A DNA stretch of 64,000 nt from positions 187,781 through 251,780 of IMG/VR virus record IMGVR_UViG_3300049048_000052. One strand, 5' to 3'. This document shows, piece after piece, positions 36,984 to 63,897 of this stretch (position 1 is the stretch's first letter; every line of letters starts with the position of its first letter). The notes beneath the pieces were generated by a model. That model had not been told where the DNA came from, searched no databases, and was given only the letters and a program-made list of their open reading frames with translations. Both the position numbers and the translations under genes were made by a program.

Positions 36984-39900
36984 TTAGTACACGTATGTCA
37001 TAACGTTCTTTATAACAGCCTGCTTGGCTCTATCGGTGGTACTGATCTCTATCCTATACCTAAACTTCTTCCTGAGCTCAGTAAGTGCATAGATAGTAGA
37101 TGGCTCTACCTTAAAGTATCTAGCCTCATATAGCTGAGTACCACTGTCCACAAGAGAGACGGAGGTGTTATCTAGGGTTAACTCATACCACTCCTGGCCT
37201 TCCCATGCAAAGCCGCTAGTAGGACTGTAGAATACCTTAATATTAGCTTCAACTGGTTTCACATATCTAACTATGACATCTATCTTTTTATAGGCATCCG
37301 GATAGGTGACCATCTTACTTACTATTTGAGAGGCAGCATTAGCAGAATAAAAAGATATAGAGTTACCCTCTAGTGATATAGCAGGGCTAATAGTATCTGA
37401 GAATGTAGATAATGTAGCCCTAACTCTTAGAGAGTTCTTCTTAAAGGGTAAACATACTGTGACGTTAGGTTGGAATTTAACCCATACACTAGGAGTACTC
37501 TCGTATTCATAGGTAAGCTCTGTACCCTTTGGTACTATGTCTCTTGTATTGAGGCAGAAATAAGTTATATCAGTTACGGCATCTGATATGCCATAGGTAC
37601 CTAAGTCTACAATTACAGGACTAGTACTAAACTTAGCCCGGTCAATCTCATATGTAAGATCCTCCCGGTCTAATTCGCTAAGTATATTACCGTCCTTAGT
37701 TGTATATAGGGAGCCTTGTAGATACAGTTGGTCTCCTAAGGTTGAACCATTAATAAGATCTGGCTCTCCTAGTTGAGAAGTAAATATATTAAAGGATCCC
37801 GAGGTACTTTCTAGACCTAACGAGTAGTTTTGGTTCCTATTTATAAGGATAGGCTTAGGAAACTGGAATGTAGTCTGTAGGGCAGAATTGGTACTGTATT
37901 GATACGTATCTGCTTGGGCCCTAGTGTAAGTTATCTTACCCGGCATATCATTAGCAGACCTTAGGTATACATTAAGATCTCCATCGGATGGACCTGACTT
38001 TAATCTTAGTTTAACCCCAGTAACATAGTAATTACCGAAGGATTCAAAGGTCTGATTAATAGGACTGAATCTAATAGGATACTCCTGAGCTTTCTCTAGC
38101 TGTAGGGTACTACTATTACCAATAGCCCCTGGATCTATATTAGATACGCCTAGCCTTAGGAGATCCTCACTAATATAGTCGTTATACTCTACGGGTAATG
38201 CAGAGTTACTGGTTACGCTTATGGGTAAGGCGCCCCAACTCTTCATAGCACCTATAACTATCTGATTAAACAAATTGTTATATAGACTAATCCTAGACTT
38301 AGCATAGCCATCATTACCTACCAGCTCTATAGCTAGAACTCCGGGGGCCAAGTCAGCAGGTAAGGTTATTCTAACTGTTATAGTTCCATCAGCTTTAGCC
38401 TTAATAGCCCCTGGGTATGCAAGACTACCCGGAGTATTATTCTGTAGGACAAAGGTAGTTACAGGCTTACCCGATATCATAATTCTATAATTATCAGAGC
38501 CCGGTATTAGGCCTTCTGCCATAAGGATTAAGCCAATATTAGCCTCTATAGTAACCTGGGAGAATAAGGCAGCCAGGAAACTATTAGTTCTAGCATCTAC
38601 GCTGTTAATAGCATCACCTGATAATATAGAGTCGGAGGCCTTTTCAGCTGCCGAGGAGAAGAGACTATTAACTGAAGATACAATACTATCCACATAAGGA
38701 GAACGTGCTCCCTGTCTAAGTAATGTGCTTGTTATAGCCGTAAGGTAATCACAAGGTGTTAAACCCTTAAAGGTCTTATTATTAAATAATGTGGCACTGG
38801 AAATATATAACTTACCTCTCCTCTTAACACTATTGGAGTAAGGAGATAGCGCCATAGATCTAGTGGCCCTTGACTGAGAGATAAGGGGAACATTGGTATA
38901 GGGTAAGGTTACTACCGAATTAATACCTGTCTCATTCTTTGATACTAATCCACCTGATGTATACCTAATAGGTACATCCTTATGAATATAACCCGCGCTA
39001 ATAGACTGTATAGCAGGAACTACAGAAGCACTCCAGAGAGTGGACGAAGTATCCAACTTAGATAAGTCTTGCACTGGTTCATTGAATAGGCCTATAGGGG
39101 CGCTACCTACCGCTAAACTAGATCTCCTATATGCTTCTAGGTCTAACTTGATTATCTCTAGATTCTGAGTGTTTTGCCGTACCCTGTCTGATAATACCTG
39201 TTGATCTTGGACTGTAAGTCTACGACACTTAAGAGGTGCAATAGTAATCCTATCTGCAAACATCTTAAAGGATGATACTGCTAATAGATTATCTGGTACT
39301 GAAGGTAGTAATGGGTCCTGACTAGCCGCAGATAATATATAACCAAAGTTACCATCCTTGTCTAGAGTTATTACACCAGCCTTAGCTAGATAATAGGTAT
39401 AGCTGACAGTAAATGTACCATTATAAACATTAATGCCTTGGGCCGTCTGGGTATAGACTACTGCAGGCGTTCTACCAATAAAGATTATAGAGTCTGTACT
39501 GGAATCCAGGGTGAAATCATCGTTTATTGCTAAGGGCTGGGTATATAAAAAGGACACATAATAGGTGGTGCCGGGGGCAGGTTCAACCCCTGACAGAGAC
39601 CAATCAATCTTAGACTGATCTACTAAACGGAAGTCTATGCCCTCCGTATATGTAGTAGTACCTTGTATAACCTTGATGATTCTGAATATAGAATCATCTC
39701 CTAATAGATCTGTAGTACCAGGGGTGGTACCTCTGACTAGAGGTTTTAAGTCCTCCTGCATCTCAGCAACTAGGCTAAGTATTTCAGCAACGGGTCTAAA
39801 TCCTAGTTGGAAGGCAGTTGTAGTGCCTCCGCCACCTAGATTAGCACTAGGGATATCAGATATGATACGGCCTGCACCGGAGGCTTGATTGCTACTGTTC

Positions 39901-51512: not shown

Positions 51513-52570
51513 TATACTATCCTCAAGTCTATAACTAGGGAGTCTATACCTATGGCACTCTCAGCCTCTACGCTAATATCCTCAGTAGGTGTTATAACCT
51601 GACAGTTAGTTATGCCGGGTACAGCTAGAGCTATAGCTGCTATAGAACTAAGGGACATTGTGCCGCCTAGTGGTATAGACTCGCCGTAAGAGGTGATCCT
51701 GGCTTTTACTTCGGATAATGTGGCCTGGTATATATCAGGCCTATCAGTGTTTAATAGGAGTGATACTGATGTCCTATAAACCTGCAATGGCTTAACTATA
51801 TAAGATACACCGGAGGCCTTATTCTGATCTATGAGAGCCCTTACAGAGGCTTGAACTCTTGCATCTTGACTGTCTATATATACAGTTATGAAACCCGTAG
51901 CAGGTGTGTGTTCCTTAATATATATTCTGCCCGGCACATAGGATAATATGGCCGTATATATAGCCTCTCTAGTACCCCTAGCTAAACTAGTAATATAAGA
52001 GGATATCCTAGATCTCAGCTGCCTATCTGACTCAGAGGACTTACCTCCTACAAGCGATACCTGAGGTTCTTTAGTAGTTGGGTCCCTATACTTACCTACT
52101 ACAAATGTAACCTGAGGATATCTAGCAGAGAATAGTCTGATACCTGCATCCAGATTGGCATCGCTAGTGTTATCTACTGAGGTAATAGGTATGGGATTCT
52201 CAGTATAGATAAATACGTCAGCGGTAGTAGTAAACTGTAGGGTCTGCTGTGCGTTGGTTAGTACTGTGCCAGAGGGTATTTCTATCTGACTAGCAGAGGC
52301 TAGAACAAAGCCGCTGGCGGGTAGACCTAACTGTCTGGCCAGACCTACATCAGATGCCTTGCGATCTAGCTCTTCTGCTTTAGCAGTGTCTAGATAAAAG
52401 GAGTTCTCTATATTAGATAAGAGTAGATCTTGTTCAGCCGCTATTATGGCACTGCTCCTTAGCAGTGCATATATATTACTAAAGGGGGAGAAGTTAGCCA
52501 AGGGTGAGGATAGAGACTGTAAGCCCCTTCTCATGGTTTGCATAACCTCGTTTACTGATCTGGGTATCAT
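51512..52570 (-). CDS. Baseplate J/gp47 family protein
   Basis: LDTAKAEELDRKA, IPSGT, GGKSSESDRQLRSRI, ARGT and VPGI. Confidence 0.92.
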   Translation of the reverse strand: MIPRSVNEVMQTMRRGLQSLSSPLANFSPFSNIYALLRSSAIIAAEQDLLLSNIENSFYLDTAKAEELDRKASDVGLARQLGLPASGFVLASASQIEIPSGTVLTNAQQTLQFTTTADVFIYTENPIPITSVDNTSDANLDAGIRLFSARYPQVTFVVGKYRDPTTKEPQVSLVGGKSSESDRQLRSRISSYITSLARGTREAIYTAILSYVPGRIYIKEHTPATGFITVYIDSQDARVQASVRALIDQNKASGVSYIVKPLQVYRTSVSLLLNTDRPDIYQATLSEVKARITSYGESIPLGGTMSLSSIAAIALAVPGITNCQVITPTEDISVEAESAIGIDSLVIDLRIV

Positions 52571-52992
52571 AGACTTAATGTGGTAACAATAGTTTGGACG
52601 GGTTGTCCTAGTAGGGAATACTCAACCTTAACGTCAATAGTATCGAAGCTGACAACGTTAACTCTTACTGACTCAAGATTAATCTCAGAGGACACAAAGG
52701 ATATAGCACTCTCTATATCCTGTTTAATCTGGGAGACAAGATTAACTGTAAGGCCCTCAGATAGACGACTATATATAGCATCCCCAAAACCCCCATCCAG
52801 ATTAGATATACCATTAGTATCTATAACATAGCGACCTATATAACCTAAGGGCGTCTCAACGGCCCTTCTTACTAAGTGTCTAATGGCAGTCACTTCATCC
52901 TCTACCTCTATGTCATAGTAGGTAATACTATCGTCGGCGCCATCAAACTCTCTAATAGAAAAGTCCTGATTTACTAGTTTTATGTCTATCAT
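52567..52992 (-). CDS. gp25/GPW-like sheath initiator
   Basis: AVETPLG..FG..LSE pattern; size and position before baseplate J. Confidence 0.7.
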   Translation of the reverse strand: MIDIKLVNQDFSIREFDGADDSITYYDIEVEDEVTAIRHLVRRAVETPLGYIGRYVIDTNGISNLDGGFGDAIYSRLSEGLTVNLVSQIKQDIESAISFVSSEINLESVRVNVVSFDTIDVKVEYSLLGQPVQTIVTTLSL

Positions 52993-53366
52993 GATAGGGG
53001 TATAGGTGGGAATGTAGAGAAGGGCATACCTACTATTAACTTGGCTTTATCCCTAGTAATTCCTACTACTATTTGGCCGGATACACTGGTATTACCATTC
53101 TTGTAAACAGTTATCTTAATAGTATAGAAACCTAGGTTCAGATTGTTACTCTTTTTGTATAAGAAGAGTACCCCATTAGCAGAGTAATTGACTATCTCTT
53201 CCCATAGCTTCATTTGGGTAGGACCACAGTTAAGCCAGTTAAAGTTAGGATTCTCAGATGAGTAATGTATTTCACACTTAGTGGCCACAGCATCTGCTAC
53301 ATCTAAGGCAGGCACAAATACGGCTATACCCTTATTAATTACGGGAGGTGGTGCAATTGGTTTCAT
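52989..53366 (-). CDS. Hypothetical baseplate-region protein
   Basis: Coupled ORF with ATGA overlaps. Confidence 0.7.
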   Translation of the reverse strand: MKPIAPPPVINKGIAVFVPALDVADAVATKCEIHYSSENPNFNWLNCGPTQMKLWEEIVNYSANGVLFLYKKSNNLNLGFYTIKITVYKNGNTSVSGQIVVGITRDKAKLIVGMPFSTFPPIPLS

Positions 53367-56300
53367 ATAACTATATACGCATCGCTTATAAGTGGGATTA
53401 ATCTATTACCAATATCATCTATATCATATTCATATATGAGACCTTGGGGATCCTGCAACTGTATAACTGGGACAGCCCTACTTATAATAGCTATACCTAT
53501 ATTGTTGGCCAGTTGGTAGTCAGTTATTTGGTAGCTGTATACAGTGGGAGTATACTGCCCTGGGCCTATGTAAGGCTTTAGCTCAGTAAGATCCCTGGCC
53601 CTTACAAATGTATTAATCTTAAGTTGTAGGACGTCACCAGCAGAGGGAATCTTTCCACCTAGGATATTGGCTTTAGGATTAGCAAGACCAAATAGTATCC
53701 TAGCATTGTAGGTTTCTTTTATTTCTACAGTGCCTTGGATATAGGTGGTAGTCGGTACTCTAAAGCAACCATCTAAGGGAATATCTAAGGAGAGCTGTTT
53801 GATGCTATCTACTACTTTAGGGTCTATAGTATCTAAGAAGTTTTCAGGTGTGTCCTTAATAGTATTAAAGGCCTGTATTAATCTTGGTAGATCCTCGGTG
53901 GCCCCCACTGCATCATTGGGATTTCCGCCCTTAAATAGATTAGATACCTTACCGAGTAGGCTATTTATCTTACCTAGTAGGTCTAGACAATTCAATATAG
54001 TATTTACCTGATCTAGGAACCCTATATTGTACTTATTCATAAGGTTTACCAGTTCAGGAACTTTACTAAGGGCCTCAATGGTACCATATAAAGTCTCCGC
54101 AACGTCTATAGCATCTCGTACTGTTCCTGCATTCTCAGGTCCAGCTATAAAGTCAAGCAGACTATTAAAGGAGCCTCCCTTAATAACCGTCATAACGTCC
54201 CCAGTATTTATATCTTTTATAAGACCTTGAACGTTTCTATATAGGCCCACCGCAGTACCTATCTCGCTGACCCCAGTAATCTTCTGTAATACAGAGGCGA
54301 TGCTGTCTATCAATCTATCGCTGTCTATTGGTTGGCCATTAGTATTATCGATTATGATGCGGGTTATATCAGGTATAGCTGAGGCATATCTATCATCTAG
54401 GAAATTGGATAGTACTTGGGAAACTGAATCTACTAATCCCCTATCTACTAGTTGACGGAAGTCTGCCTCTGGATTCTTAAGTAGAATATCCCCTATATTA
54501 ATTAGAGGAGTTAGGCTGGAATCAAACTTAGAGACAAAGTAGTTAAGTCCTGAGAGGTCATTCTGGCATATACCTTCTAAAGCACTAAGACCGTCACTTA
54601 CACTGACTATAATAGGAAGACCTATACCAATAGCACTACTAATTTCTGTGCCATTGTTATTGAGTACATCAATAACACCCCCAAAGTAACCTACAGCAGC
54701 TATATAACTACCAATGTCCTGCGTCCTCTTAACTAACTGAGGACCTCCTTCCATATCAAGTATATAAGGAGGTACATCCTGTATAAGAACCTTATCCAAA
54801 TTCTTTATTACTTCCTTAGTGGTCAGGTCTGGTATCTTAAATTGTTTAGCTGCCTCAGTAACCGCTGAAGGCACTGCCTTTAGTAATGGGGGTAGTAAGT
54901 CTGGTCCCTTTTCATCCTTAGGGGATTCTTGTTTATTAGGTAATTGGCGAGAATATCTACTAGGGTATATATGGAGACCGCCCTTTATAAACTCCGAACC
55001 TCTTATAGCAGAGGTACTCTCCACTTGAGAGGTCTCTTGTTTGTTAGGACTATTAGAGGAGGCTAAGGCTCTAGGAGGACTAAACTTGTCGGCGGTACTG
55101 GTCTTATTTATATGAGCGGGTTGTCTAAGTGTCGGGTTACCATCACTAGTTCTACCTATAGAACTAGTAGACGTACCAGTTGCTGCATAGATATGATTCT
55201 CTCTGTTTGGTTGAATAGGGGGTTTATACATATGGCCTTCCCTATTAGTCTCAGGAGGTAGGTCATCTTGACTCATACCCTCTGCAGACTTCTTACCTAA
55301 CTCTATACCTTTCTTAATGTTGTCCTGAGCTGAAGGTTTCTTGACCTTGAATCTATCAGGTATACAAGCCTCAAGACTGGATAGAGCTCCACTAGGAAGA
55401 GTTGGTAACTCAGGTATCTGTACGATCTTACCTGGAGTTACGGATTCTATATCAAAGGGCACTATAGGTATAGGCATTCTACCCAGAAACGTTAGACCTC
55501 CATATATAAATAGGCCACCCCTATTAGTGGCCGCAGTGAGGGTCTGACCACCAGAGATAGTCATAGTGCGAGTGGCAGAGAAAAGGCTATTCTTGGTAGC
55601 GCTAATAGCAGCCTCAGTAGCTACATTAATAATGCTTTGACTAATGGCGGCAGTTATCTCACCAGCATTAGTAACAAAGTTACCACTACTAGTAACCGAG
55701 ATATTACCAGTATTACCGCCCTTACCATTACTAATCAGTTTGATATAACCATTAGAACCTGTTAGAGGATCTAAGGGATTACTACCTGCAGCATTAACAG
55801 ATGCGACATCCTCTGTAGAGGCAGATGCAGTGATAGTAAGATCACCGGATTGAAGGGATGTGGCATTACGAGAGCTAATACGCATAGTAGAGGCAGATGC
55901 CTGCTCTAAGTGATCATCAGCATATATATTGGTATTCTGACCTTGTATCTCGTTGAGGCCTGTAGCAACTGACTGGGCTTCCTTAGAGAAACTCCTATTA
56001 CTCTCAGTTGCTACAGTTTGTATATAAGTAGCTGTCTTTTGGTCTACTGCTAATTCTGTATATCTATTCTTACCTATATTAAACTGTTCATCTGATATAG
56101 TAGCTATTTGGTTGGCGTGTATCTGCTGTAGCTTAGTATTCATACTAAATACAGGAGACATGATATTAGTTACTGCATCAGAACCAATATGTAATGTGTT
56201 GGCACCTATTCGCAGGTCGGTACCTGCTGATATGATAATGCCCCCGTTAGACTTAGATGCACTACGGGATACAGATTCGGCAGCACTGGATAATGTCTTA

Positions 56301-56701
56301 CCTGCCTTCTCTGTACCTTTCTTAATCGGATCACTTGCCTTCTTACCATCCTTAGTTAGAGAGGCCACTCTTTGAGAGGACTCCGAGGCAGGTTGTAAAT
56401 ATGACTCGGTAGTAGATTGAGAGGTACCCATAAACGAGTTAACTGGGTAGGTGCCACTAATAGCAGCCAAAGGCTCTGCTAGTATCTGATGAGATATGTT
56501 AAGAGGTTTATCCGTATTATCAGACTTAGCAGAGGTGGATGATAGTAAATCTATACCTGTTGTAAAGGAATACTTAGTAGCCTGCAGGTTAGTATTAATA
56601 GAGTCCTTCTGAACATCATAAGCCTTCAGGTTATAACCCTTACCTGAGTAAGTAGATAATTTGGGGCTATCTAATAGCTCCTTGATACTAGTAGTTGTCA
56701 T
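53363..56701 (-). CDS. Large putative baseplate/spike-associated protein
   Basis: 1112 aa; Ser/Thr/Ala beta-repeat-like N-half, low-complexity linker, amphipathic helical C-half. Confidence 0.65.
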   Translation of the reverse strand: MTTTSIKELLDSPKLSTYSGKGYNLKAYDVQKDSINTNLQATKYSFTTGIDLLSSTSAKSDNTDKPLNISHQILAEPLAAISGTYPVNSFMGTSQSTTESYLQPASESSQRVASLTKDGKKASDPIKKGTEKAGKTLSSAAESVSRSASKSNGGIIISAGTDLRIGANTLHIGSDAVTNIMSPVFSMNTKLQQIHANQIATISDEQFNIGKNRYTELAVDQKTATYIQTVATESNRSFSKEAQSVATGLNEIQGQNTNIYADDHLEQASASTMRISSRNATSLQSGDLTITASASTEDVASVNAAGSNPLDPLTGSNGYIKLISNGKGGNTGNISVTSSGNFVTNAGEITAAISQSIINVATEAAISATKNSLFSATRTMTISGGQTLTAATNRGGLFIYGGLTFLGRMPIPIVPFDIESVTPGKIVQIPELPTLPSGALSSLEACIPDRFKVKKPSAQDNIKKGIELGKKSAEGMSQDDLPPETNREGHMYKPPIQPNRENHIYAATGTSTSSIGRTSDGNPTLRQPAHINKTSTADKFSPPRALASSNSPNKQETSQVESTSAIRGSEFIKGGLHIYPSRYSRQLPNKQESPKDEKGPDLLPPLLKAVPSAVTEAAKQFKIPDLTTKEVIKNLDKVLIQDVPPYILDMEGGPQLVKRTQDIGSYIAAVGYFGGVIDVLNNNGTEISSAIGIGLPIIVSVSDGLSALEGICQNDLSGLNYFVSKFDSSLTPLINIGDILLKNPEADFRQLVDRGLVDSVSQVLSNFLDDRYASAIPDITRIIIDNTNGQPIDSDRLIDSIASVLQKITGVSEIGTAVGLYRNVQGLIKDINTGDVMTVIKGGSFNSLLDFIAGPENAGTVRDAIDVAETLYGTIEALSKVPELVNLMNKYNIGFLDQVNTILNCLDLLGKINSLLGKVSNLFKGGNPNDAVGATEDLPRLIQAFNTIKDTPENFLDTIDPKVVDSIKQLSLDIPLDGCFRVPTTTYIQGTVEIKETYNARILFGLANPKANILGGKIPSAGDVLQLKINTFVRARDLTELKPYIGPGQYTPTVYSYQITDYQLANNIGIAIISRAVPVIQLQDPQGLIYEYDIDDIGNRLIPLISDAYIVI

Positions 56702-58031
56702 TTATAGGATCATCCTTAAAGTCTTTTCTTCCATCTTCTATTCCAGATAGAAGAGCTAAATTATCAGCCGTATTAATCATGTGTTCTAGGTTAGATTTCT
56801 TTAGTAGCCTAGAGGCTAAATATATTAGTCTGAAGATGCGGCCTAATTCATCTGTGGGTACTAATGTTTGATCTGTTGATCTGTTATTACTTATGTGAGT
56901 ATGTACAAGTATATAAGCCCTATTAAGTAATGAGGCCGCAGATATAAGTAATGCCATGTTAAGTCCTGAGGGATTAGGGTATGTTTCTAATAACAACTGT
57001 GAGGCCTCCCTAAGGAGTCCCGCCCTATCATTAAGACTTATATTAAGCACTAACTCCTCTAGGAGTATATCTATAGAACCTGAGGGCGCCCCAGCAATAT
57101 AACTTGTCCTCTTCCTAATATCCACTAACTCCTCCTCTACCTTATAAAGGATAGGACATATACTCTGGTGTATAAAATCCCAACCTAGATTAACTAGAGA
57201 GTCATGATCTATACCGTTAGACAAACATAAACAAGCAATGTCCTTCAGGGTATCGTAAGCATACCTGCTATTCTCTGTCTCGGGGACTAAGGGTAATATG
57301 GGTAGATCTGTCTCACTATAAGGTTGAAGGTACCAAGATATTACCTTGGGCAACCAAGACTGTAAGAATTGAAGCCTCTTGTATGAGGTCCTAATAATAT
57401 TGACCCTAGAGACTAAATCACTATGGAATCTATATATTGCGGTGTCACTCTCTATTGAGTCCTTAGTAGTATGCTCTATAAACTGGTCATAGATATTGAC
57501 TATCTGTTGGGTATCCTCTCTTTCCCTAAGAGGTTGGACAGTTAGATCGATAAGACTTCTAATATTTACATCTATAAGTTGAGAAGTGGATTGATATTCC
57601 TCTAAGGTTTCTTTGAATACCTGATAATAAGATAGAGTTCCGTATGTTCCCACCCAAGTCTTAAAGTTGGAGAACATTAGCTCGTTAACATAGTCATCCG
57701 TGGGTAGTATCTTAAGTGAGCTAACACCTATCTTCCTCCTACAATAATGAGGGCTAAGCTTCCTTCTATCCATAGAACCAATCGTGGGTATGGTTAAGAG
57801 GGTAACCATATAGCTTTCTAGGGAGAGTAAGAGGGAATATAGACTAGCCTCGTCTTGGGCATCTATCTCCCTACTCTGCAATTCTTGGAGTTCTGAGAAT
57901 CTACTTATAGTGTTAATGCAGTTAAAGCTCAAATTAAGATAGCCCTTAAAAAGAAGGGCATTGCTAGTATTGTCCTGGTTATATATGTATGTATCCTCTA
58001 TAGGAAGTTCGTCTAAATACTGTATATCCAT
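56688..58031 (-). CDS. Hypothetical helical protein
   Basis: 447-aa ORF in the operon. Confidence 0.75.
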   Translation of the reverse strand: MDIQYLDELPIEDTYIYNQDNTSNALLFKGYLNLSFNCINTISRFSELQELQSREIDAQDEASLYSLLLSLESYMVTLLTIPTIGSMDRRKLSPHYCRRKIGVSSLKILPTDDYVNELMFSNFKTWVGTYGTLSYYQVFKETLEEYQSTSQLIDVNIRSLIDLTVQPLREREDTQQIVNIYDQFIEHTTKDSIESDTAIYRFHSDLVSRVNIIRTSYKRLQFLQSWLPKVISWYLQPYSETDLPILPLVPETENSRYAYDTLKDIACLCLSNGIDHDSLVNLGWDFIHQSICPILYKVEEELVDIRKRTSYIAGAPSGSIDILLEELVLNISLNDRAGLLREASQLLLETYPNPSGLNMALLISAASLLNRAYILVHTHISNNRSTDQTLVPTDELGRIFRLIYLASRLLKKSNLEHMINTADNLALLSGIEDGRKDFKDDPINDNY

Positions 58032-58693
58032 CTCTCTATTACCTGAGCTACTGATTGTACTGTTCTCTCGGAGAAGCCTAAACCACGACTAGCCATGACG
58101 CCTGCCTTTACCCTATCACCATTAACTACTATAGACTGGAAGGCATCCATGCCTATGACCTGATAGTCACAACAGTTAAATATCCTATCTAGTTTGTCAT
58201 AGAGGGATAGATCGTCCTTACTTATAAACTCTATAGTTGAGTCCATACCTATAACATGTGTTATGGCTGAGGTCTCTTCTCTATCTAAAGATGCCTTAAT
58301 AGTATTACTGAAGTTCACCGAGGTGACTGATTCAGATAACCTAAGAAGACTTACTGAACTAGGTATATTACTTATGATCTTCTGTTTGAAGTCAGATCCC
58401 TCTTGTTCAGTGTAGTACTTAAGAGTATCAGCATCCTCCTTACTAAATAAATAGGCAAGGAGCACCTGTACCTTAGGTGGAAATAAGAATAGGTTAACCT
58501 GACCCGCTCTAGTATCAAACATCCTAAGCTTAGGTCCCTCTTCAGGTATAGCAGTTATAGAGGATTGTATAAGGTGAGATAGTAGCTCATACTGAGCTTC
58601 ACTACCACCATCATCTGCTATAGCAGACTTAAGTAGATATTCATGTTCCCTGCCAATGTAGTAGGGGTAATTGGATGATAGTGTTGCTGCCAT
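58013..58693 (-). CDS. Hypothetical protein
   Basis: 226-aa ORF coupled to the lysin gene. Confidence 0.75.
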   Translation of the reverse strand: MAATLSSNYPYYIGREHEYLLKSAIADDGGSEAQYELLSHLIQSSITAIPEEGPKLRMFDTRAGQVNLFLFPPKVQVLLAYLFSKEDADTLKYYTEQEGSDFKQKIISNIPSSVSLLRLSESVTSVNFSNTIKASLDREETSAITHVIGMDSTIEFISKDDLSLYDKLDRIFNCCDYQVIGMDAFQSIVVNGDRVKAGVMASRGLGFSERTVQSVAQVIERWIYSI

Positions 58694-59829
58694 TATATTT
58701 TCACATATAGTACTGGATTAAGAGGTTTGCCATAGCTGCCTCCTCTTCTAACTTCAAAATGTAAGTGGGGACCAGTAGAGAAACCAGTACTACCCATAAG
58801 ACCTATAACAATACCTTGCTTAACATCCTGACCTGTCCTAGCTATTATCTTGCTGAGGTGTGCATATCTAGTAGTTAGACCGTTGGCATGTTGTATATCC
58901 ACAATATTACCGTAGCCACCTGCGGGGCCTGTATATATAACCTTGCCATCGCCTGAGGCTAATATGGGTGTGCCTGTATTGTTAGCTATGTCAACTCCGT
59001 TATGCATTCTACCCCAGCGCCAACCAAAGGGTGAGTTAAATATGCCTTTGCAGGGGCGTATAAAACCGCCAGGGATAGGTGTGAAATTAACAGGAGGTGC
59101 TCCTATGCCAGCAGGTGCCCCAGTACCAAGTACACCCATACCTGGAGCGGGATAAGGATAACCTGTACCTCCTGGCCTAGCTGTAGCTATCTTAGTAGCA
59201 CAGCCTGTATATATAATACGATCCGCCACCGTATAAGGAGGTGGGTCACAATTAGATCCTGTTAACATTATAGATAATGCTCCTTCGCCTGATGGTAATT
59301 GAGGGGCTGTACCTGCTACTGGGCTATTAGTAGGGCTATTAGGATTGATAGTATCACCTAAGGCTACTGCACCGTCCCCTAATCTTTTACCCTTGAAGGC
59401 TGCAAACTTCTTCTTAACATCACTAAGTGTACAGACACCTTGTTTACTATACCTCCAGGGAGGTAGTGATGCCCACTCGTGGGATAGCTTATTCATAGCG
59501 GCCTCTATATTACCACTAAGGACCTCCTTAAGAGCAAACTGCTTTCTATGTATAAGGACTATAGCAACTAGATCTTGATTATGAGGTGAGAAGTCTGTGG
59601 CCCCCGCAAACCTCTTATAACTATCCCAGGTTGTACTAATAAACTGATAGCGGCCTGCTGCATCAGAATTCACACTTCTCTGATATTGTCTAGGATGGTC
59701 GGCATAAGAATATAGCTTCTTATAAGTAACGATGGTGTTATAGGTGGCGCCCTCACAACTGGCTATCACATTAAGCATGGCCCTAATGTTATCGTTCTTT
59801 AGCAGATTCTCATAATAGTCTCTAGACAT
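58693..59829 (-). CDS. Lambda-type lysozyme/lytic transglycosylase (GH104) fused to an M23 metallopeptidase
   Basis: IASCEG, DHP, AAGRYQF and EWASLP; Pro/Gly linker; RWGRMHNGVD and STGPHLHFE. Confidence 0.93.
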   Translation of the reverse strand: MSRDYYENLLKNDNIRAMLNVIASCEGATYNTIVTYKKLYSYADHPRQYQRSVNSDAAGRYQFISTTWDSYKRFAGATDFSPHNQDLVAIVLIHRKQFALKEVLSGNIEAAMNKLSHEWASLPPWRYSKQGVCTLSDVKKKFAAFKGKRLGDGAVALGDTINPNSPTNSPVAGTAPQLPSGEGALSIMLTGSNCDPPPYTVADRIIYTGCATKIATARPGGTGYPYPAPGMGVLGTGAPAGIGAPPVNFTPIPGGFIRPCKGIFNSPFGWRWGRMHNGVDIANNTGTPILASGDGKVIYTGPAGGYGNIVDIQHANGLTTRYAHLSKIIARTGQDVKQGIVIGLMGSTGFSTGPHLHFEVRRGGSYGKPLNPVLYVKI

Positions 59830-60283
59830 CCTCTACTCCTAAATCTATTTGTTTAGTACGGGTAAATCTGTTTAGATATCTGTATAACTTAGACTTATCA
59901 AAGTTAATGGGGTCCTCATAATAACCAGTAGTATCTATCTCTGTATGAGTGGTAATACGATCATCCTCTATACCCGTCGCAGCTACAACCATAGCTAAAC
60001 TCATATATTGCTCCTCTGTGTACCCCTGATGAGGATCCAACACCTCTGGTGACTCTAATGCAATCTGATATGCGAAGTCGTCTACTGAGTTGTTAATGGA
60101 CTCTCCATTAAATTCAGTATTAGCAGCGGCAAATGCTTTCATATTGGAGGCCACCCCATAAAGGATAATACCATCCCTGGTTATCAGGACATGGTAACTG
60201 ACGCCGGAGGATGCAGATTGTAACTCCCTTAGGGCCTGTTGTATTGGTACCCCAGTCTCATGTATAACTACTATTGGTTTCAT
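59822..60283 (-). CDS. N-acetylmuramoyl-L-alanine amidase (Amidase_2)
   Basis: VVIHET, VSYHVLI, YTEEQY, ITTH and DP zinc-ligand pattern. Confidence 0.87.
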   Translation of the reverse strand: MKPIVVIHETGVPIQQALRELQSASSGVSYHVLITRDGIILYGVASNMKAFAAANTEFNGESINNSVDDFAYQIALESPEVLDPHQGYTEEQYMSLAMVVAATGIEDDRITTHTEIDTTGYYEDPINFDKSKLYRYLNRFTRTKQIDLGVEDV

Positions 60284-60292
60284 GTTTTATCT

Positions 60293-62008
60293 TTATAGTA
60301 GAGTGTTCAATAGTTCTGTAAGTCTAGTATAAGCAGACCCAGTCAGGTGTATGCCGTCTGTAGTAAACTCTTTCTTGATAGATCCGTTACTAGAGACTAT
60401 AGATGAGTAAGCATCAAAGTAACTATAACTAGTACCGCCGCTAGCCCTAAGCCTATCGTTTATCCACAGAATGTCCTTATTCTGGACGTTAGCAATCTTA
60501 TCCTTATAATCCTTATTAATAGCGGTGATCTCATCAGGAGCACTCTTAGGTAGGATAGACTGTATATATATCTTAGTGGTGGGAGAGGCTGTATTTATAC
60601 GCTTAACTGTCTCCATTAAGTTTTTATATACATCCTCCCTATTTCTGCCTGCTAATAAATCATTAATACCTACGGCAAGTACTACTGTTTTGGGTTTGTT
60701 GCTGGCTATTTGGTTAGCTCGATTAAGAAGGCCAATAGAGCTCTCCCCCGATATACCTTGGTTCAATACCTTATTATTCAATAGAGTAGGAGGTATTCTC
60801 TGTACTATAGAGTCTCCTGCTATAATCGAGGCTCCAGAGGTAGATGACTCCTTCTCAAATAAAGACAACCAGTCTGAATACTTAGGGGATCCAGGAGGTG
60901 CCTCAGTCTTAAAGGCTGCTTTATATCTAGTCCTATAAATAGATTCACCTGATACCTGGGTAGTATTCCTTAGGGCCATATTAGCAGGATTCACTGCGGC
61001 GTTCCTTTGGTCTGCAGGCATATAAGTAGCACCATCTACTGCCAGCTTAACCTCACTAGGTTTAGAGCCTGTCTCATTGCCATACTTAGTCTGTAGAATA
61101 TCAGCCTGTGCCATAGTCGAGGCGGATTGAGTATTACAATCCTTAGCCCTATCTAAGGCTAACTTACTAAGCTCTTGGTTCTGCTCGGCTCTATATGTAG
61201 CAGGCAATGGCTCATTAAAATCACTAAGTACTGGAGGAGTATCGCTGACTGGTACTAAGGGCTTAACCCCACTTGCAGTAGTAGCTAAGGAGCCTCCTAT
61301 AGCCCTACCTATAAAATAAGCTATACGACTGTGAGTGGAGGCTAACCTAAGCATTTGGGTACATTTCTCCTCTGTAGTACCCCCACTAACAGTGATATTG
61401 TTACCGTCGGAGTAGTTGATAATAGAGCCAAAGGTATAGGAGACTAACTCTGTACCATTCTTCATTATGATAGAACCAGTCTGTCCCCTAGAGGCGGCCT
61501 TGTCCTGTATCGTATCGTGGAACTCAGGGGAGTCATAGGCTGTGGCCATTACCTTAGAGCCTATAAATGAGAAGTCAGCCTCAGGCTGTGTAACCCTATT
61601 AGGATGGATACTTGTTTGATTAGCTTCTGCTTGGCCGGTATCTGAGCCTATAAGCTCACCAGGCTTATTACCTTCACCCTTGTTGAGAAACTTATCCCAT
61701 TCGCCATTAGTCCAGAAGGATCTGATGATTACTGCATCCTCTAAGACCCCATTCTTACAAAGGATTATTACAGGATCCTCATTCTGTAAGGCCTTATATT
61801 CACCATTACCATTGTAGCTGGCATACTCCGACGCTCTCTTACATTGACGAAGGGTAACACCCCAATCCATTAGATTGACATCATAGGATTGAGTGAGGTC
61901 ATTATGTCTCTGTTTATTAACAATCTTACCCATGTACATATGGTTGGAACCATAACGATTCTCAAAGGCATGATTAGTAAGAAATATATTATTAGGATTA
62001 TCGCTCAT
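60293..62008 (-). CDS. Baseplate spike-like protein (gp5/VgrG OB-fold-like N-terminus) fused to a C-terminal SGNH/GDSL hydrolase
   Basis: N-terminal GKIV..D..V..GNGEY..EDPVII..G..AVII; SGNH blocks GDS, NQGISG, GIND and DGIH. Confidence 0.8.
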   Translation of the reverse strand: MSDNPNNIFLTNHAFENRYGSNHMYMGKIVNKQRHNDLTQSYDVNLMDWGVTLRQCKRASEYASYNGNGEYKALQNEDPVIILCKNGVLEDAVIIRSFWTNGEWDKFLNKGEGNKPGELIGSDTGQAEANQTSIHPNRVTQPEADFSFIGSKVMATAYDSPEFHDTIQDKAASRGQTGSIIMKNGTELVSYTFGSIINYSDGNNITVSGGTTEEKCTQMLRLASTHSRIAYFIGRAIGGSLATTASGVKPLVPVSDTPPVLSDFNEPLPATYRAEQNQELSKLALDRAKDCNTQSASTMAQADILQTKYGNETGSKPSEVKLAVDGATYMPADQRNAAVNPANMALRNTTQVSGESIYRTRYKAAFKTEAPPGSPKYSDWLSLFEKESSTSGASIIAGDSIVQRIPPTLLNNKVLNQGISGESSIGLLNRANQIASNKPKTVVLAVGINDLLAGRNREDVYKNLMETVKRINTASPTTKIYIQSILPKSAPDEITAINKDYKDKIANVQNKDILWINDRLRASGGTSYSYFDAYSSIVSSNGSIKKEFTTDGIHLTGSAYTRLTELLNTLL

Positions 62009-62016
62009 AGTTCTCC

Positions 62017-63897
62017 TTAGAAATCACTAACCATTGCAACTTCACTAGTGTAACCAGCGGATTTGCCTTGGGTAATAATCTTATGTTTTATACTTCTAAC
62101 CTTGTATACAGGTAGGATAAGCTTATCCTTATTAGTCTCTATGGTTGAAGTGCGTATGGTACTCTGAGCAAGTTCACTTTGCTCAGTGATAGGTGATCCG
62201 CCTTTAGGTGTTCCAGGAGGTTTACCCTCAGAGTAACTGCTATTGAATTCATCTATAGCCTCTTCTTTGCTCTTGATGGACTTATCAGTGCCTGGATCTA
62301 CTAAGGTATGTGTGTCATGTAATACAGAGTTATATATTCTTACAGCCTCACTGGGATACCATGTTGGATCTCCCATAACTGTCATTTGTACTGCTGTAAT
62401 ATCACGAGCCCATATACGAGCCGCTGATAATCCTACAATTAAGGCCCCGCCTGCAGCACTCTTATAGGTAGATAGGGCCCCATCAAAGACTATCATATTC
62501 CTACAGGGGGGCTTTATTTTCCTATCATCTCCAGATAGTATCCAAGGTAGAGTCTCTAGGGATACCTGTATATTCTCAGCCATGGTGGCTGCGTTAGCTC
62601 CATTAGTATTAGAATCTATAACTACGAACCTATTATAAGTAGCTAAGGTTGATGTGGTGGCCCTCATAGATATAATCTGTTGATTAACACTGGGAGGTGC
62701 TTTATCCCTGGGCCAATCTTTAAAGAAGTATGTTCTATAAGATCTTAATTTATCTTTGAATCCTGAGTTATCTAATACTCTAGGACCAAAGACAAAGTCG
62801 CCATTTACATGTGAGGTAAAGAAGTCTATCGGTCTTTCCTCTGTGGCAGCTAGGAATTGTATTATTTCTAGAGGGCTTCTATTAAGTATCTGAAAGACAG
62901 AGCCTCCACCCTGACTCTTAACTAACGGAGGTCTCTGTACCCAAGTGTGAAACCTGGGTCTACTAAGATAGTCCATAACCTTATGAGTAGCAAACCTCAT
63001 CCATTTAGCTGGGTCCTCTGCGGCATCCTCTTGAGTGAAGCTAACTCTATTATTGTTGTCAGTAGGATATGCGGTGAATGATTGGGCTAAAGGCTCCTCC
63101 TCAGCACCTAGTATAGGCTTCCAACATGTAGGTTCCGTCTGGTCTGCGGTAGGTACGTCGCCTGTGGCAGCCTTAGCTACCTGTATAAGTATCTTATCTC
63201 TTCTACCTTCAGCAACCCCTGTGCCAGCATTCTTATCTTTATTAGAGGGGCCTGCTAGCTCTGGTATAGATATTATCTTAGTGTCCTGAAACACTCTACC
63301 CCTATCTCTGCAAGATATAACATACTGCACCCCACCCCTCGCATCAGCAAGAAGGTCTAGCTTATCTATAAATCCCCAGAATACTGGGGCAAAAGGCTTA
63401 CTTGGGTTATGTTTCATTTCCCCTGTAGCCTGAAATGGTTCAACAGGGTAATCATCTAGCATGTCAGCAGTAATAGGAGTAGTAGGGCTATCTATGTAAC
63501 CCATGTAGACTCTTATTTCATCCTCTACTGTTAAATAAGGATAATTACCGCCCCTAATCTCTTTAAGGTTAGGAAGAGGTGGTATAGGCGTAAGGGAATC
63601 TTTAAGAGGACATGTAAGTGTAATCATTGCGGTTGATACACTCCAATCTCTTACAAGGTCTATACTAATAGACTTGATGGCCCATTCTAATACAGTGTCC
63701 TGAGTCTTTAGGTCTTGAGCATTCTTTATTTGGGCGGGGGTAAGATTGATGTTTGGTCCTTCCGCTTTAAGTATTGTGTAATACCCCTTAACATCATACT
63801 TAGTAGTAAAGAGTATGTGTTGATAAGGTGATTTATTACCTGCGTATACTACTACTGCGGCAGGTACTACTGCATCTGGACTATATGTCTTAGCCAT
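62017..63897 (-). CDS. Baseplate hub protein (gp27/gpD-like)
   Basis: DEIRVYMGY, VFWGFID, ISCRD, TVMGDP and YKVRSIKHKI..GYTS. Confidence 0.78.
   Translation of the reverse strand: MAKTYSPDAVVPAAVVVYAGNKSPYQHILFTTKYDVKGYYTILKAEGPNINLTPAQIKNAQDLKTQDTVLEWAIKSISIDLVRDWSVSTAMITLTCPLKDSLTPIPPLPNLKEIRGGNYPYLTVEDEIRVYMGYIDSPTTPITADMLDDYPVEPFQATGEMKHNPSKPFAPVFWGFIDKLDLLADARGGVQYVISCRDRGRVFQDTKIISIPELAGPSNKDKNAGTGVAEGRRDKILIQVAKAATGDVPTADQTEPTCWKPILGAEEEPLAQSFTAYPTDNNNRVSFTQEDAAEDPAKWMRFATHKVMDYLSRPRFHTWVQRPPLVKSQGGGSVFQILNRSPLEIIQFLAATEERPIDFFTSHVNGDFVFGPRVLDNSGFKDKLRSYRTYFFKDWPRDKAPPSVNQQIISMRATTSTLATYNRFVVIDSNTNGANAATMAENIQVSLETLPWILSGDDRKIKPPCRNMIVFDGALSTYKSAAGGALIVGLSAARIWARDITAVQMTVMGDPTWYPSEAVRIYNSVLHDTHTLVDPGTDKSIKSKEEAIDEFNSSYSEGKPPGTPKGGSPITEQSELAQSTIRTSTIETNKDKLILPVYKVRSIKHKIITQGKSAGYTSEVAMVSDF

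What the first reader, a model, noticed from the sequence alone, without database searches (positions are those of the whole stretch)
58693..62008. Baseplate cell-wall breaching cassette: spike-borne SGNH esterase, amidase, lytic transglycosylase and M23 peptidase
Seen: three consecutive genes right after the hub encode four catalytic domains with intact motifs. They cover the glycan, amide and peptide bonds of peptidoglycan, plus an esterase fused to the gp5-like spike. Known: lambda R-type enzymes are lytic transglycosylases that need a free MurNAc C6-OH; O-acetylation blocks them; Ape1 peptidoglycan O-acetylesterases are SGNH hydrolases. Inference: the spike esterase may strip O-acyl groups from peptidoglycan (or sheath/EPS) to license the adjacent transglycosylase. 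This would be a multi-enzyme drill suited to thick cyanobacterial walls.
Basis: partly seen in the sequence, partly recalled or inferred. Interest (0 to 1): 0.75.

Follow-up and report, generated by a model that had tools for sequence, protein, structure and literature searches.

The report
Phage spike with wall-cutting enzymes
A 252-kb soil phage related to viruses of cyanobacteria encodes, beside its tail-tip hub, a needle protein fused to an acetyl-removing enzyme and then three cell-wall-cutting enzymes; the cluster is real and conserved, and is a new variation on a known entry toolkit.

Summary
Three tightly packed minus-strand genes (60293-62008, 59822-60283, 58693-59829) follow a gpD/gp27-like hub and encode four enzyme domains: SGNH esterase, Amidase_2, lambda-type GH104 transglycosylase and M23 peptidase.

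The N-terminus of the 571-aa protein is a gpV/VgrG-type central spike: all 16 best structural matches are spikes of contractile systems.

The module (sheath, tube, hub, spike, enzymes, gp25, gpJ) recurs in nine related phages, including Microcystis phage Ma-LMM01 and Microcoleus phage My-WqHQDG.

New here: the C-terminus of this spike family is a swappable cargo slot. Of 58 homologues, 46 carry wall enzymes there (Amidase_2 28; also VanY, beta-lactamase-like, Amidase_3, M23, GH104, DPBB, C39). One relative fuses spike, amidase and SGNH in a single protein.

The "Ape1-like de-O-acetylase that licenses the transglycosylase" idea remains unproven. The SGNH domain is closest to sialate O-acetylesterases and PAF acetylhydrolases (Z 23.9), not Ape1 (Z 14). 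A full-text search found no report of peptidoglycan O-acetylation in cyanobacteria. GH104-M23 also occurs without SGNH.

No virion proteomics exists for this group, and Ma-LMM01-group papers list the GH104-M23 orthologue (Ma-LMM01 gp095, MaMV-DH01 ORF117) as a lysis gene.

Verdict: a new variant of a known kind (T4 gp5, evolved VgrG, phi11 Tal-SGNH, A-1(L) hub). Interest is moderate.

The parts
62017..63897 (-). Baseplate hub, 626 aa, gpD/gp27/Mu gp44-like
   Evidence: phrog_34291 5.5e-88, the Ma-LMM01 gp093 family. Atlas structural look-alikes are Phage_GPD / late control D proteins, TM 0.74-0.79 by target. Homologues in the phage collection occur only in cyanophages.
61379..62008 (-). Central spike domain (residues 1-210): N-terminal helix, OB fold and beta region, gpV/VgrG type
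   Evidence: Model pLDDT 86. The 16 best VIA matches (Z 8.2-10.6) are all central spikes: S. coelicolor CIS, R2 pyocin, PVC, AlgoCIS, Mu gp45, AFP, A-1(L), VgrG1, P2 gpV, Pam3 and others. Weak Phage_base_V hits occur in homologues. phrog_30576 'baseplate protein' 8.5e-23.
61049..61378 (-). Two long helices (residues 215-237 and 270-309), possible trimer stalk
   Evidence: Secondary structure of both models. Conserved E213/K215/C216. Function is inferred.
60899..61048 (-). Flexible linker (residues about 321-370)
   Evidence: pLDDT below 50 for residues 321-350. The region is variable and gapped in the family alignment.
60296..60898 (-). SGNH/GDSL acetylesterase-like cargo domain (residues 371-571)
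   Evidence: Pfam PF13472 3e-15. PDB sialate O-acetylesterases 7PZG/6NJC 8e-19, Z 23.9, rmsd 2.0. Ser400, Asn449, Asp551 and His554 are conserved.
59822..60283 (-). Stand-alone Amidase_2 (MurNAc-L-Ala amidase type), 153 aa
   Evidence: PF01510 1.5e-11. Only copy in the genome. Homologous, with E-values down to 1e-38, to the C-terminal cargo of 20 spike homologues. Zn ligands are conserved and Tyr122 replaces the T7 K128-equivalent.
59380..59829 (-). GH104 lambda-lysozyme-type lytic transglycosylase domain (residues 1-150)
   Evidence: 1AM7/3D3D 4e-16 and A-1(L) hub 8KEA_A 8e-7. Catalytic Glu26 by direct reading, with a Glu kept in orthologues.
59080..59379 (-). Pro/Gly-rich linker (residues about 151-250)
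   Evidence: Direct reading of the translation. The region aligns poorly among orthologues.
58696..59079 (-). M23 zinc endopeptidase domain (residues 251-378)
   Evidence: PF01551 7.8e-35. HxxxD and HxH motifs. Only copy in the genome. The whole protein matches phrog_28672, the Ma-LMM01 gp095 family, at 1e-67.
51512..58693 (-). Rest of the conserved baseplate module: 226-aa, 447-aa, 1112-aa and 125-aa proteins, gp25-like (52567-52992) and Baseplate_J (51512-52570)
   Evidence: Pfam and PHROG hits. The same order is found in Ma-LMM01, L004, L010, L011, L012 and L017.

Best explanation
This is the cell-wall-breaching part of the baseplate of a contractile-tailed jumbo phage of the Ma-LMM01 / My-WqHQDG (cyanophage) lineage.

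Proposed architecture (inferred):
- The 571-aa protein trimerises through its gpV-like N-terminal helix, OB fold and beta region inside the gpD-like hub.
- A helical stalk and a roughly 50-residue flexible linker let it carry three copies of an SGNH acetylesterase.
- A PAAR protein encoded elsewhere in the genome probably supplies the sharp tip.

Proposed action (inferred):
- On sheath contraction the spike takes its cargo through the outer membrane to the peptidoglycan.
- The two following gene products are a MurNAc-L-Ala amidase and a two-domain GH104 lytic transglycosylase plus M23 endopeptidase.
- They are made with the spike and most likely act with it as virion-associated lysins, opening a local hole for the tail tube.
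- The SGNH domain most likely removes O-acetyl groups from a wall glycan. Its closest relatives are acetyl-specific esterases, and the same slot in homologous spikes holds almost only peptidoglycan enzymes.
- Whether the target is 6-O-acetyl-MurNAc (which would unblock the transglycosylase) or an acetylated wall-linked or sheath polysaccharide is open.

Shown: domain identities, catalytic motifs, spike fold, synteny, the cargo-slot pattern and the fusion proteins.

Inferred: trimer architecture, presence of the free enzymes in the virion, substrate of the esterase, and order of action.
For: - Gene positions and packing. Sheath and tube lie directly upstream of the hub across the record ends.
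- Domain hits and motifs.
- Spike fold: all 16 best structural matches are central spikes. Hub fold.
- Synteny in nine relatives.
- Cargo slot: 46 of 58 spike homologues carry wall enzymes C-terminally, and nine carry two or three.
- Fusion evidence: P0014/L017 is spike + Amidase_2 + SGNH with no free amidase. L010 and L011 are spike + Amidase_2. P0007 is spike + M23. P0045 and P0049 are spike + a GH104-like domain.
- No signal peptide or membrane helix in the cassette proteins, and no holin-like neighbour.
- Precedent in a solved cyanophage baseplate: the A-1(L) hub gp15 carries lysozyme, endoglucanase and M23 domains, and the endoglucanase and peptidase domains were shown to be active (PMC10966104). 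Its lysozyme domain is a sequence relative of this GH104 domain.
- SGNH relatives are acetyl-specific: sialate O-acetylesterase Z 23.9 and PAF acetylhydrolase Z 19.9.
- A PAAR gene is present in the genome.
Against: - No virion proteomics or structure exists for this phage group. The MaMV-DH01 paper says mass spectrometry is still needed (PMC9927357).
- The free amidase is a bare 153-aa catalytic domain with no evident docking element.
- Ma-LMM01-group papers list the GH104-M23 orthologue among the lysis genes (Ma-LMM01 gp095, 'lysozyme/metalloendopeptidase', PMC5780444; MaMV-DH01 ORF117).
- No GH24, SLT, GH25, M15_4 or Hydrolase_2 endolysin was found elsewhere in the genome, so the cassette may also, or instead, supply the endolysin.
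- Against the peptidoglycan-deacetylase step: the domain is not Ape1-like, the literature search found no cyanobacterial peptidoglycan O-acetylation, and GH104-M23 occurs without SGNH in three relatives.
- The amidase lacks the Lys/Arg found in most fused homologues.
Confidence: 0.6

Rival explanations
1. Only the spike-SGNH protein is structural. The amidase and the GH104-M23 protein are the phage's ordinary endolysins that happen to be encoded in the tail operon. They act from within at the end of infection, or they serve both entry and exit.
For: - Ma-LMM01-group papers call the orthologue a lysis gene.
- Amidase_2 and M23 are single-copy.
- No GH24, SLT, GH25, M15_4 or Hydrolase_2 gene was found elsewhere.
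- The free amidase is only a catalytic domain.
Against: - The position between spike and baseplate genes is conserved in ten phages.
- The same domains are covalently fused to the spike in relatives.
- A-1(L) carries homologous domains in its solved hub.
- No holin, signal peptide or SAR segment is adjacent.
- The genome has other candidate lysins: a DPBB_1 protein with a weakly hydrophobic N-terminus, and a Peptidase_C39_2 protein.
Confidence: 0.25
2. The SGNH domain de-O-acetylates a surface polysaccharide (sheath or EPS, LPS O-antigen, or a wall-linked polysaccharide) rather than peptidoglycan. It would act as a receptor-modifying or path-clearing esterase, like the deacetylating tailspikes of Vi phages, and would be unrelated to the transglycosylase.
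For: - The closest solved relatives act on O-acetylated sugars of glycoconjugates (sialate O-acetylesterases).
- Phage SGNH domains described so far are mostly capsule or LPS deacetylases on fibres and spikes (PMC5380687; titles).
- Peptidoglycan O-acetylation is not documented for cyanobacteria.
Against: - It sits on the central spike, not on a peripheral fibre.
- The same slot in 46 of 58 homologues holds peptidoglycan enzymes, and no recognised polysaccharide depolymerase appears there.
- In all three known contexts it travels with an amidase and an M23 protein whose N-terminal domain is GH104 in two contexts and SLT-like by eye in the third.
Confidence: 0.3
3. The SGNH domain is a lipolytic enzyme (lysophospholipase or phospholipase type) that weakens the outer membrane at the point of puncture.
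For: - The SGNH superfamily includes TesA/lysophospholipase L1 and PlaA (weak hits).
- PAF acetylhydrolases act on a lipid.
- The spike is the first part to meet the outer membrane.
Against: - The best matches are acetyl-specific enzymes, not long-chain lipases.
- No lipid-binding lid or extra domain is seen in the 200-aa model.
- The slot's other cargoes are wall enzymes.
Confidence: 0.1
4. The cassette is a chance juxtaposition, or the enzyme domains are decayed relics with no role.
For: None beyond the Tyr at the Lys128-equivalent position of the amidase.
Against: - Catalytic residues are kept at 33-60% protein identity across relatives.
- The order is conserved in ten phages.
- E-values range from 1e-11 to 1e-35.
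Confidence: 0.02

Closest known systems
Anabaena myophage A-1(L) baseplate hub gp15 (PDB 8KEA; PMC10966104)
   Same: A cyanophage with a contractile tail. A lambda-type lysozyme domain (sequence match 8e-7) and an M23 peptidase are built into the baseplate next to a gpV-like spike. The peptidase and endoglucanase domains lyse host cells in vitro.
   Different: In A-1(L) the enzymes are domains of the hub itself and the spike (gp25) is bare. Here the hub is bare, the spike carries cargo, and the lysozyme-M23 pair is a separate 378-aa protein. A-1(L) has no SGNH or amidase.
Staphylococcus phage phi11 Gp44 / 80alpha Tal (tail-tip protein with a C-terminal SGNH/GDSL hydrolase)
   Same: A tail-tip structural protein with a C-terminal SGNH domain of unproven activity, accompanied by a second virion peptidoglycan hydrolase (PMC4876445; PMC5380687). 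Host MurNAc 6-O-acetyl groups matter for phi11 adsorption.
   Different: phi11 is a siphovirus of a Gram-positive host. The carrier is the gp27-like Tal, not a gpV-like spike. Its SGNH domain was reported as similar to carbohydrate esterase 2WAO, which is only a weaker match here (Z 13.2).
T4 gp5 and 'evolved' VgrG spikes (for example V. cholerae VgrG-3)
   Same: An OB-fold central spike of a contractile machine that carries a peptidoglycan-active enzyme to the periplasm. A PAAR tip is encoded separately. VgrG1 and VgrS are among the structural matches.
   Different: gp5 has its lysozyme inserted before a long beta-helix. Here the cargo is C-terminal, after helices and a linker, and no long beta-helix is predicted. 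The cargo is an esterase. The comparison with VgrG-3 rests on my own knowledge and was not tested here.
Bacillus phage phi29 gp13 (tail-tip lysozyme-like domain + LytM/M23 endopeptidase, about 365 aa)
   Same: The same two-domain plan as the 378-aa protein: an N-terminal glycan-strand cleaving domain, a Gly/Pro-rich linker and a C-terminal M23 domain, sitting at the tail tip (my own knowledge).
   Different: No detectable sequence match appeared in the PDB search. phi29 is a podovirus of a Gram-positive host, and its N-domain family differs.
Ape1 peptidoglycan O-acetylesterases (Neisseria, Campylobacter; PDB 4K3U, 8GLD)
   Same: SGNH catalytic core with Ser-His-Asp and the oxyanion residues.
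   Different: Only superfamily-level similarity (Z 14.2-14.3 against 23.9 for sialate esterase), and no sequence hit at E<=1. Ape1 chains are 350-365 aa, whereas this domain is about 200 aa with no extra domain.
Ma-LMM01 gp093-gp095 and My-WqHQDG homologues (Fukuivirus and relatives)
   Same: Orthologous hub, spike and GH104-M23 genes in the same order.
   Different: The Ma-LMM01 spike has an unrecognised C-terminal region and no amidase gene. The My-WqHQDG spike carries a beta-lactamase-like domain and is followed by two M23 proteins. Ma-LMM01-group papers annotate the GH104-M23 orthologue as a lysis enzyme (gp095; MaMV-DH01 ORF117).

Membership tests
SGNH/GDSL hydrolase superfamily | Block I GDS with the nucleophilic Ser | tested here: met
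   GDS at 398-400, conserved in P0002, P0003, P0014, P0004 and P0031.
SGNH/GDSL hydrolase superfamily | Block II Gly and block III GxND (oxyanion hole) | tested here: met
   NQGISGE and GIND 447-450 are conserved in all aligned homologues.
SGNH/GDSL hydrolase superfamily | Block V DxxH (Asp-His of the triad) | tested here: met
   DGIH 551-554, conserved as TDG[IVL]H.
SGNH/GDSL hydrolase superfamily | Three-layer alpha/beta/alpha fold | tested here: met
   Model residues 374-571 align to 7PZG with Z 23.9 and rmsd 2.0 over 190 residues. Pfam score is above the cut-off.
Ape1-type peptidoglycan O-acetylesterase | Closest sequence or structure relationship to Ape1 rather than to other SGNH subfamilies | tested here: not met
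   No Ape1 chain among the phmmer hits at E<=1. Ape1 4K3U/8GLD score Z 14.2-14.3 and rank 38-40, behind sialate esterase, PAF-AH, xylan esterases and OatA.
Ape1-type peptidoglycan O-acetylesterase | Additional non-catalytic domain accompanying the SGNH core (Ape1 chains are 350-365 aa) | tested here: not met
   The cargo domain is about 200 aa. Only 164-169 residues align to the 350-365-aa Ape1 chains.
Ape1-type peptidoglycan O-acetylesterase | Hydrolysis of the 6-O-acetyl group of MurNAc in peptidoglycan | not testable with these tools
   Needs an enzyme assay. Also, one literature search found no report of O-acetylated peptidoglycan in cyanobacteria.
gpV / gp5 / VgrG central spike of contractile systems | N-terminal OB fold followed by a beta region that builds the trimeric spike | tested here: met
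   Residues about 14-210 match R2 pyocin spike, P2 gpV, Mu gp45, VgrG1, PVC, AFP, AlgoCIS, A-1(L) and Pam3 spikes at Z 8.2-10.6. No non-spike protein ranks among the top 16. The OB signature motif matches 9GTR_q. Weak Phage_base_V hits occur in homologues.
gpV / gp5 / VgrG central spike of contractile systems | Encoded beside the gpD/gp27-like hub in a module with sheath, tube, gp25 and gpJ | tested here: met
gpV / gp5 / VgrG central spike of contractile systems | Trimeric assembly with a pointed apex or a PAAR cap | tested here: inconclusive
   Only a monomer was modelled. No long beta-helix or apex domain is predicted, and helices follow instead. A PAAR-motif gene exists elsewhere in the genome.
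GH104 (lambda R lytic transglycosylase) | Sequence homology to lambda lysozyme | tested here: met
   1AM7/3D3D at 4e-16 over residues 29-128, with the envelope reaching chain residue 5.
GH104 (lambda R lytic transglycosylase) | Catalytic Glu (lambda Glu19) | tested here: met
   Glu26 in A-S-C-E-G lines up with lambda A-W-S-E-G by direct reading. A Glu is kept at or next to this position in five orthologues. That lambda Glu19 is the catalytic residue is from my own knowledge.
Peptidase M23 (LytM/lysostaphin type) | HxxxD and HxH zinc and catalytic motifs | tested here: met
   HNGVD 276-280 and HLH 355-357, conserved in five orthologues. PF01551 at 119 bits.
Amidase_2 (T7 lysozyme / AmpD / PGRP type) | Zinc ligands His, His and Asp/Cys | tested here: met
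   H8, H113 and D124 are conserved in 16 of 18 aligned domains. Pfam score 45 bits against a cut-off of 26.
Amidase_2 (T7 lysozyme / AmpD / PGRP type) | Catalytic Tyr (T7 Y46) and Lys (T7 K128 / AmpD K162) | tested here: inconclusive
   The Tyr is present (Y30 in SYH). The Lys position holds Tyr122 here and in L004, but Arg or Lys in most spike-fused homologues. Active PGRPs carry Thr at this position (my own knowledge), so activity cannot be judged.
Virion-associated lysin (VAL) | Physical presence in the virion | not testable with these tools
   No proteomics or structure exists for this group.
Virion-associated lysin (VAL) | Encoded within the tail or baseplate module and/or fused to a tail structural protein | tested here: met
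   Conserved position in ten phages, with covalent fusions in relatives.

The most novel reading that the evidence does not exclude
The gpV-like central spikes of this phage lineage form an 'evolved-spike' family whose C-terminus is a hot-swappable slot for one to three wall enzymes. The SGNH version is a spike-delivered peptidoglycan (or MurNAc-C6-linked glycan) de-O-acetylase that unmasks the substrate for the lytic transglycosylase encoded beside it. This would imply that the hosts, probably filamentous soil cyanobacteria, O-acetylate their wall as a barrier against phage or lysozyme, a modification not reported for cyanobacteria in the literature searched.
Probability: 0.2. Interest if true: 0.7.

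Novelty: new variant of a known kind. Interest (0 to 1): 0.5.

Why it matters
- It re-reads a gene of the Ma-LMM01 group of bloom-relevant cyanophages. The gene has been listed as that group's lysis enzyme; here it looks like part of a conserved baseplate entry module.
- It shows that the central spike of this lineage is a modular carrier for wall enzymes. That gives a ready catalogue of natural cargo combinations for studying how phages cross the thick, highly cross-linked cyanobacterial wall.
- If the esterase acts on peptidoglycan, it would be the first indication of wall O-acetylation in these hosts. It would also be an example of a phage carrying a 'licensing' enzyme for its own transglycosylase.
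- The enzymes are also candidate cyanobacteria-active lysins.

Tried and rejected
- DNA-level search of the phage collection found only a chance 81-nt M23 match to Staphylococcus tape-measure genes.
- The first locus search, using exact peptide patterns from the whole spike, found nothing in viral contigs. A ten-sequence alignment was needed.
- The 54-sequence alignment was too diverse for pattern search. The genome-collection scan gave one unnamed MAG contig, so there is no host clue.
- A profile search of the PDB with the spike N-domain gave only a sub-threshold OB-motif hit and spurious 14-3-3 matches to the helices.
- Searching the full 571-aa model returned only SGNH matches, so the N-domain had to be modelled separately.
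- The hub has no sequence match in the PDB.
- The context of the nearest cellular SGNH homologue, P0004, is uninformative, and cluster look-ups gave no names.
- The GH19 and GH108 searches are uninformative because the controls did not ring.
- Considered and rejected: that the element is a tailocin or eCIS (it is a 252-kb virus record judged complete, with homologues of Ma-LMM01 genes gp088-gp090 upstream of the sheath); that the SGNH domain is an acetyltransferase like OatA or OafA (no AT3 partner is adjacent); and that the shorter 548-aa gene call is right (the conserved N-terminal motif and helix lie upstream of Met24).
- I could not test whether candidate hosts encode peptidoglycan O-acetylation genes. 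The available families are not specific and the host is unknown.

Full report
**What is at the coordinates.** The interval 58693-62008 holds exactly three minus-strand ORFs: 60293-62008 (571 aa), 59822-60283 (153 aa) and 58693-59829 (378 aa).
- The 626-aa ORF at 62017-63897 lies 8 nt upstream.
- The genes are packed like one translational unit. There is a 9-nt gap between spike and amidase, an 8-nt overlap between amidase and the third gene, and a 1-nt overlap with the next gene.
- Pfam finds Lipase_GDSL_2 (3e-15) at residues 409-560 of the first protein, Amidase_2 (1.5e-11) in the second and Peptidase_M23 (8e-35) at residues 274-369 of the third.
- The N-terminal 150 residues of the third protein match lambda lysozyme (1AM7/3D3D, 4e-16).

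**Genome context.**
- The window is the last 64 kb of a 251,780-bp virus record judged 100% complete.
- The only sequencing run that holds it is labelled a soil metagenome.
- The record is circularly permuted. Homologues of the Ma-LMM01 sheath and tube lie at its first 4.4 kb on the minus strand, directly upstream of the hub at its end.
- The module reads: sheath, tube, hub, spike-SGNH, amidase, GH104-M23, 226-aa, 447-aa, 1112-aa and 125-aa proteins, gp25-like, Baseplate_J.
- The 626-aa protein has no Pfam hit, but its structural look-alikes are gpD/'late control D'/Mu gp44 hubs (TM 0.74-0.79 by target).
- In the phage collection, its homologues and those of the spike N-domain occur only in Microcystis and Microcoleus phages. 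A cyanobacterial host is therefore a reasonable inference, not a demonstrated fact.

**The spike.**
- A model of residues 1-320, built on 54 homologues (pLDDT 86), shows an N-terminal helix, an OB-type barrel (residues about 23-100) and a further beta region reaching about residue 192.
- All 16 best structural matches (Z 8.2-10.6) are central spikes of contractile machines: S. coelicolor CIS, R2 pyocin, PVC, AlgoCIS, Mu gp45, AFP, A-1(L) gp25, VgrG1, P2 gpV, P1, Pa193, VgrS, Pam3, PhiTE and phi812. Generic OB proteins follow only afterwards.
- The classic OB signature matches a Gp5/Vgr chain, and several homologues give weak Phage_base_V hits.
- After the beta region come two long helices (215-237 and 270-309), a disordered stretch (321-350, pLDDT below 50) and the SGNH domain.
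- The 571-aa start at 62008 is preferred over the database's 548-aa call. The N-terminal NPN..F motif and helix are conserved in homologues.
- A PAAR-motif gene lies elsewhere in the genome, so the sharp tip is probably supplied in trans.

**The SGNH domain.**
- All four signature blocks are present and conserved in the homologues that carry the domain: Ser400, the block II Gly, Asn449, and Asp551/His554.
- Its closest solved relatives are the sialate O-acetylesterases of Bacteroides/Phocaeicola (8e-19, 28-30% identity, Z 23.9, rmsd 2.0). Next come a pneumococcal PAF-acetylhydrolase-like protein and brain PAF acetylhydrolase.
- OatA C-terminal domains score Z 16.8, PatB 14.7 and Ape1 14.2-14.3, and no Ape1 chain appears in the sequence search.
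- So the domain is best described as an acetyl-specific SGNH esterase of the PAF-AH/sialate-esterase subfamily. It is not an Ape1-family member. That lowers the claim 'it is an Ape1' but does not exclude that it works on O-acetyl peptidoglycan.

**The amidase and the GH104-M23 protein.**
- The amidase keeps the zinc ligands (H8, H113, D124) and the T7 Tyr46 equivalent (Y30).
- It has Tyr122 where T7 lysozyme has Lys128. Most spike-fused homologues have Arg or Lys there. Its activity therefore cannot be judged from sequence alone.
- In the 378-aa protein, Glu26 lines up with the lambda catalytic Glu19, and the HxxxD and HxH motifs of M23 are intact. Orthologues keep these features.
- A Pro/Gly-rich linker of about 100 residues joins the two domains.
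- None of the cassette proteins has a signal peptide or a membrane helix.

**Comparative evidence.**
- The same module was recovered in nine other phages: Ma-LMM01 (L002), My-WqHQDG (L003), two Logan contigs (L004, L017) and five IMG/VR contigs (L010, L011, L012, L013/L014, L015).
- An M23 protein follows the spike in all of them. Its N-domain is GH104 in five of the ten phages, this one included.
- The amidase is free just after the spike in six, fused to the spike C-terminus in three, and absent only from Ma-LMM01.
- An exhaustive search with the spike N-domain found 58 homologues.
- Of these, 46 carry recognisable wall enzymes C-terminally. Nine carry two or three in tandem.

| C-terminal cargo | Homologues |
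|---|---|
| Amidase_2 | 28 |
| Beta-lactamase-like / S11 | about 9 |
| VanY | 8-10 |
| SGNH | 4 |
| Amidase_3 | 2 |
| GH104-like | 2 |
| M23 | 1 |
| DPBB_1 | 1 |
| C39_2 | 1 |

- P0014 (L017) is spike + Amidase_2 + SGNH in one 775-aa protein, with no free amidase gene.
- So each of the four domains of this cassette is covalently attached to the spike in some relative. This is a strong functional link, and it is the main new result.
- The similarity pattern is incongruent. SGNH is 44% identical to P0014 where the spike N-domain is 35%. Against P0002/P0003 the SGNH is 33-36% identical where the N-domain is 58-59%. This suggests that cargo is exchanged between spike lineages.

**Endolysin question.**
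- Amidase_2 and M23 are single-copy.
- No GH24, SLT, GH25, M15_4 or Hydrolase_2 gene is found elsewhere. The GH19 and GH108 searches are uninformative.
- The genome does hold a stand-alone DPBB_1 (RlpA-like) protein with a weakly hydrophobic N-terminus and a Peptidase_C39_2 protein. Both are homologous to cargo of other spikes.
- Ma-LMM01-group papers list the orthologue of the 378-aa protein among the lysis genes. Ma-LMM01 gp095 is 'lysozyme/metalloendopeptidase', expressed with its tail-gene neighbours (PMC5780444). MaMV-DH01 ORF117 is listed the same way, and that paper states that no holin was found and that virion mass spectrometry is still to be done (PMC9927357).
- A dual entry and exit role therefore cannot be excluded.

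**Mechanism.** I commit to a spike-centred entry toolkit.
- The trimeric gpV-like spike sits in the hub and carries three tethered acetylesterase domains.
- Contraction drives it through the outer membrane.
- The esterase, amidase, transglycosylase and M23 peptidase then act on the wall around the puncture.
- Domain identities, fold, synteny and fusions are shown. The assembly, the virion presence of the two free proteins, the esterase substrate and any licensing order are inferred.
- I put about 0.6 on the toolkit as a whole and about 0.25-0.3 on the specific peptidoglycan de-O-acetylation step.
- That step is plausible because lytic transglycosylases need a free MurNAc C6-OH (established knowledge) and because the slot otherwise carries peptidoglycan enzymes.
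- It is unsupported on three counts: subfamily, host chemistry and strict co-occurrence, since GH104-M23 occurs without SGNH in three relatives.

**Comparison with the known.**
- The A-1(L) hub gp15 has lysozyme, endoglucanase and M23 domains in a solved cyanophage baseplate, and activity was shown for the endoglucanase and peptidase domains.
- phi11 Gp44/Tal has a C-terminal SGNH domain of untested activity.
- T4 gp5, evolved VgrGs and phi29 gp13 are functional analogues (from my own knowledge).
- New here: a gpV-type spike acts as the carrier, the slot is exchangeable, and an esterase is among the cargoes.
- I rate this a new variant of a known kind, interest 0.5.

Noticed in passing
G000:C1:1-4375 (outside the window) and window 62017-63897: The virus record is circularly permuted. 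Sheath and tube genes at the record start are the direct upstream neighbours of the hub at the record end.
   Followed up: yes
G000:C1:29779-29943 (-), outside the window: A 93-aa PAAR-motif ORF (37 bits) lies far from the baseplate module and is probably the spike tip. Ma-LMM01 has a counterpart near 55.8 kb.
   Followed up: partly
G000:C1:108108-108605 (+) and G000:C1:146152-146916 (-), outside the window: There are stand-alone DPBB_1 (RlpA-like lytic transglycosylase) and Peptidase_C39_2 genes. Each is homologous to cargo domains on other phages' spikes. They are candidate endolysins.
   Followed up: partly
window 16523-25408 (-): A giant 2961-aa ORF carries an N-terminal staphylococcal-nuclease (SNase) domain and nothing else recognisable. 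Ma-LMM01 also has a giant gene, gp080.
   Followed up: no
window 34026-36977 (-) and 36984-41402 (-): Two adjacent large ORFs (983 and 1472 aa) both carry DUF4815. They are probably tail fibre or baseplate-periphery proteins.
   Followed up: no
window 61340-61372 (-), spike residues about 213-226: E213, K215 and C216 are conserved just after the beta region in close spike homologues, with a His about ten residues on in the family consensus. This might be a metal site analogous to the gpV apex, but that is speculation.
   Followed up: no
window 61939-62008 (-): The public gene call for the spike starts at Met24 (548 aa). The conserved N-terminal motif and predicted helix upstream support the 571-aa start.
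   Followed up: yes
window 53363-56701 (-): The 1112-aa protein downstream of the enzymes has a Ser/Thr/Ala-rich N-terminal half and the only near-membrane-like hydrophobic segment of the module (around residue 690). It may be the tape measure, placed unusually after the spike.
   Followed up: no
L017:10403-11761: In the phage with the spike-amidase-SGNH fusion, the M23 protein has a non-GH104 N-domain with an E...GVFQI motif. It looks SLT-like by eye but was not verified with a profile.
   Followed up: partly
L027:3782-5591 (Vibrio phage ZF14_PE001): A homologue of the SGNH domain sits beside an acyltransferase, between the cI repressor and the integrase. This is probably a lysogenic-conversion O-acetylation pair, which shows that this SGNH subfamily also works in glycan acetyl transfer.
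   Followed up: no
window 562-635 (+): A single tRNA-Met (CAT) gene is present.
   Followed up: no
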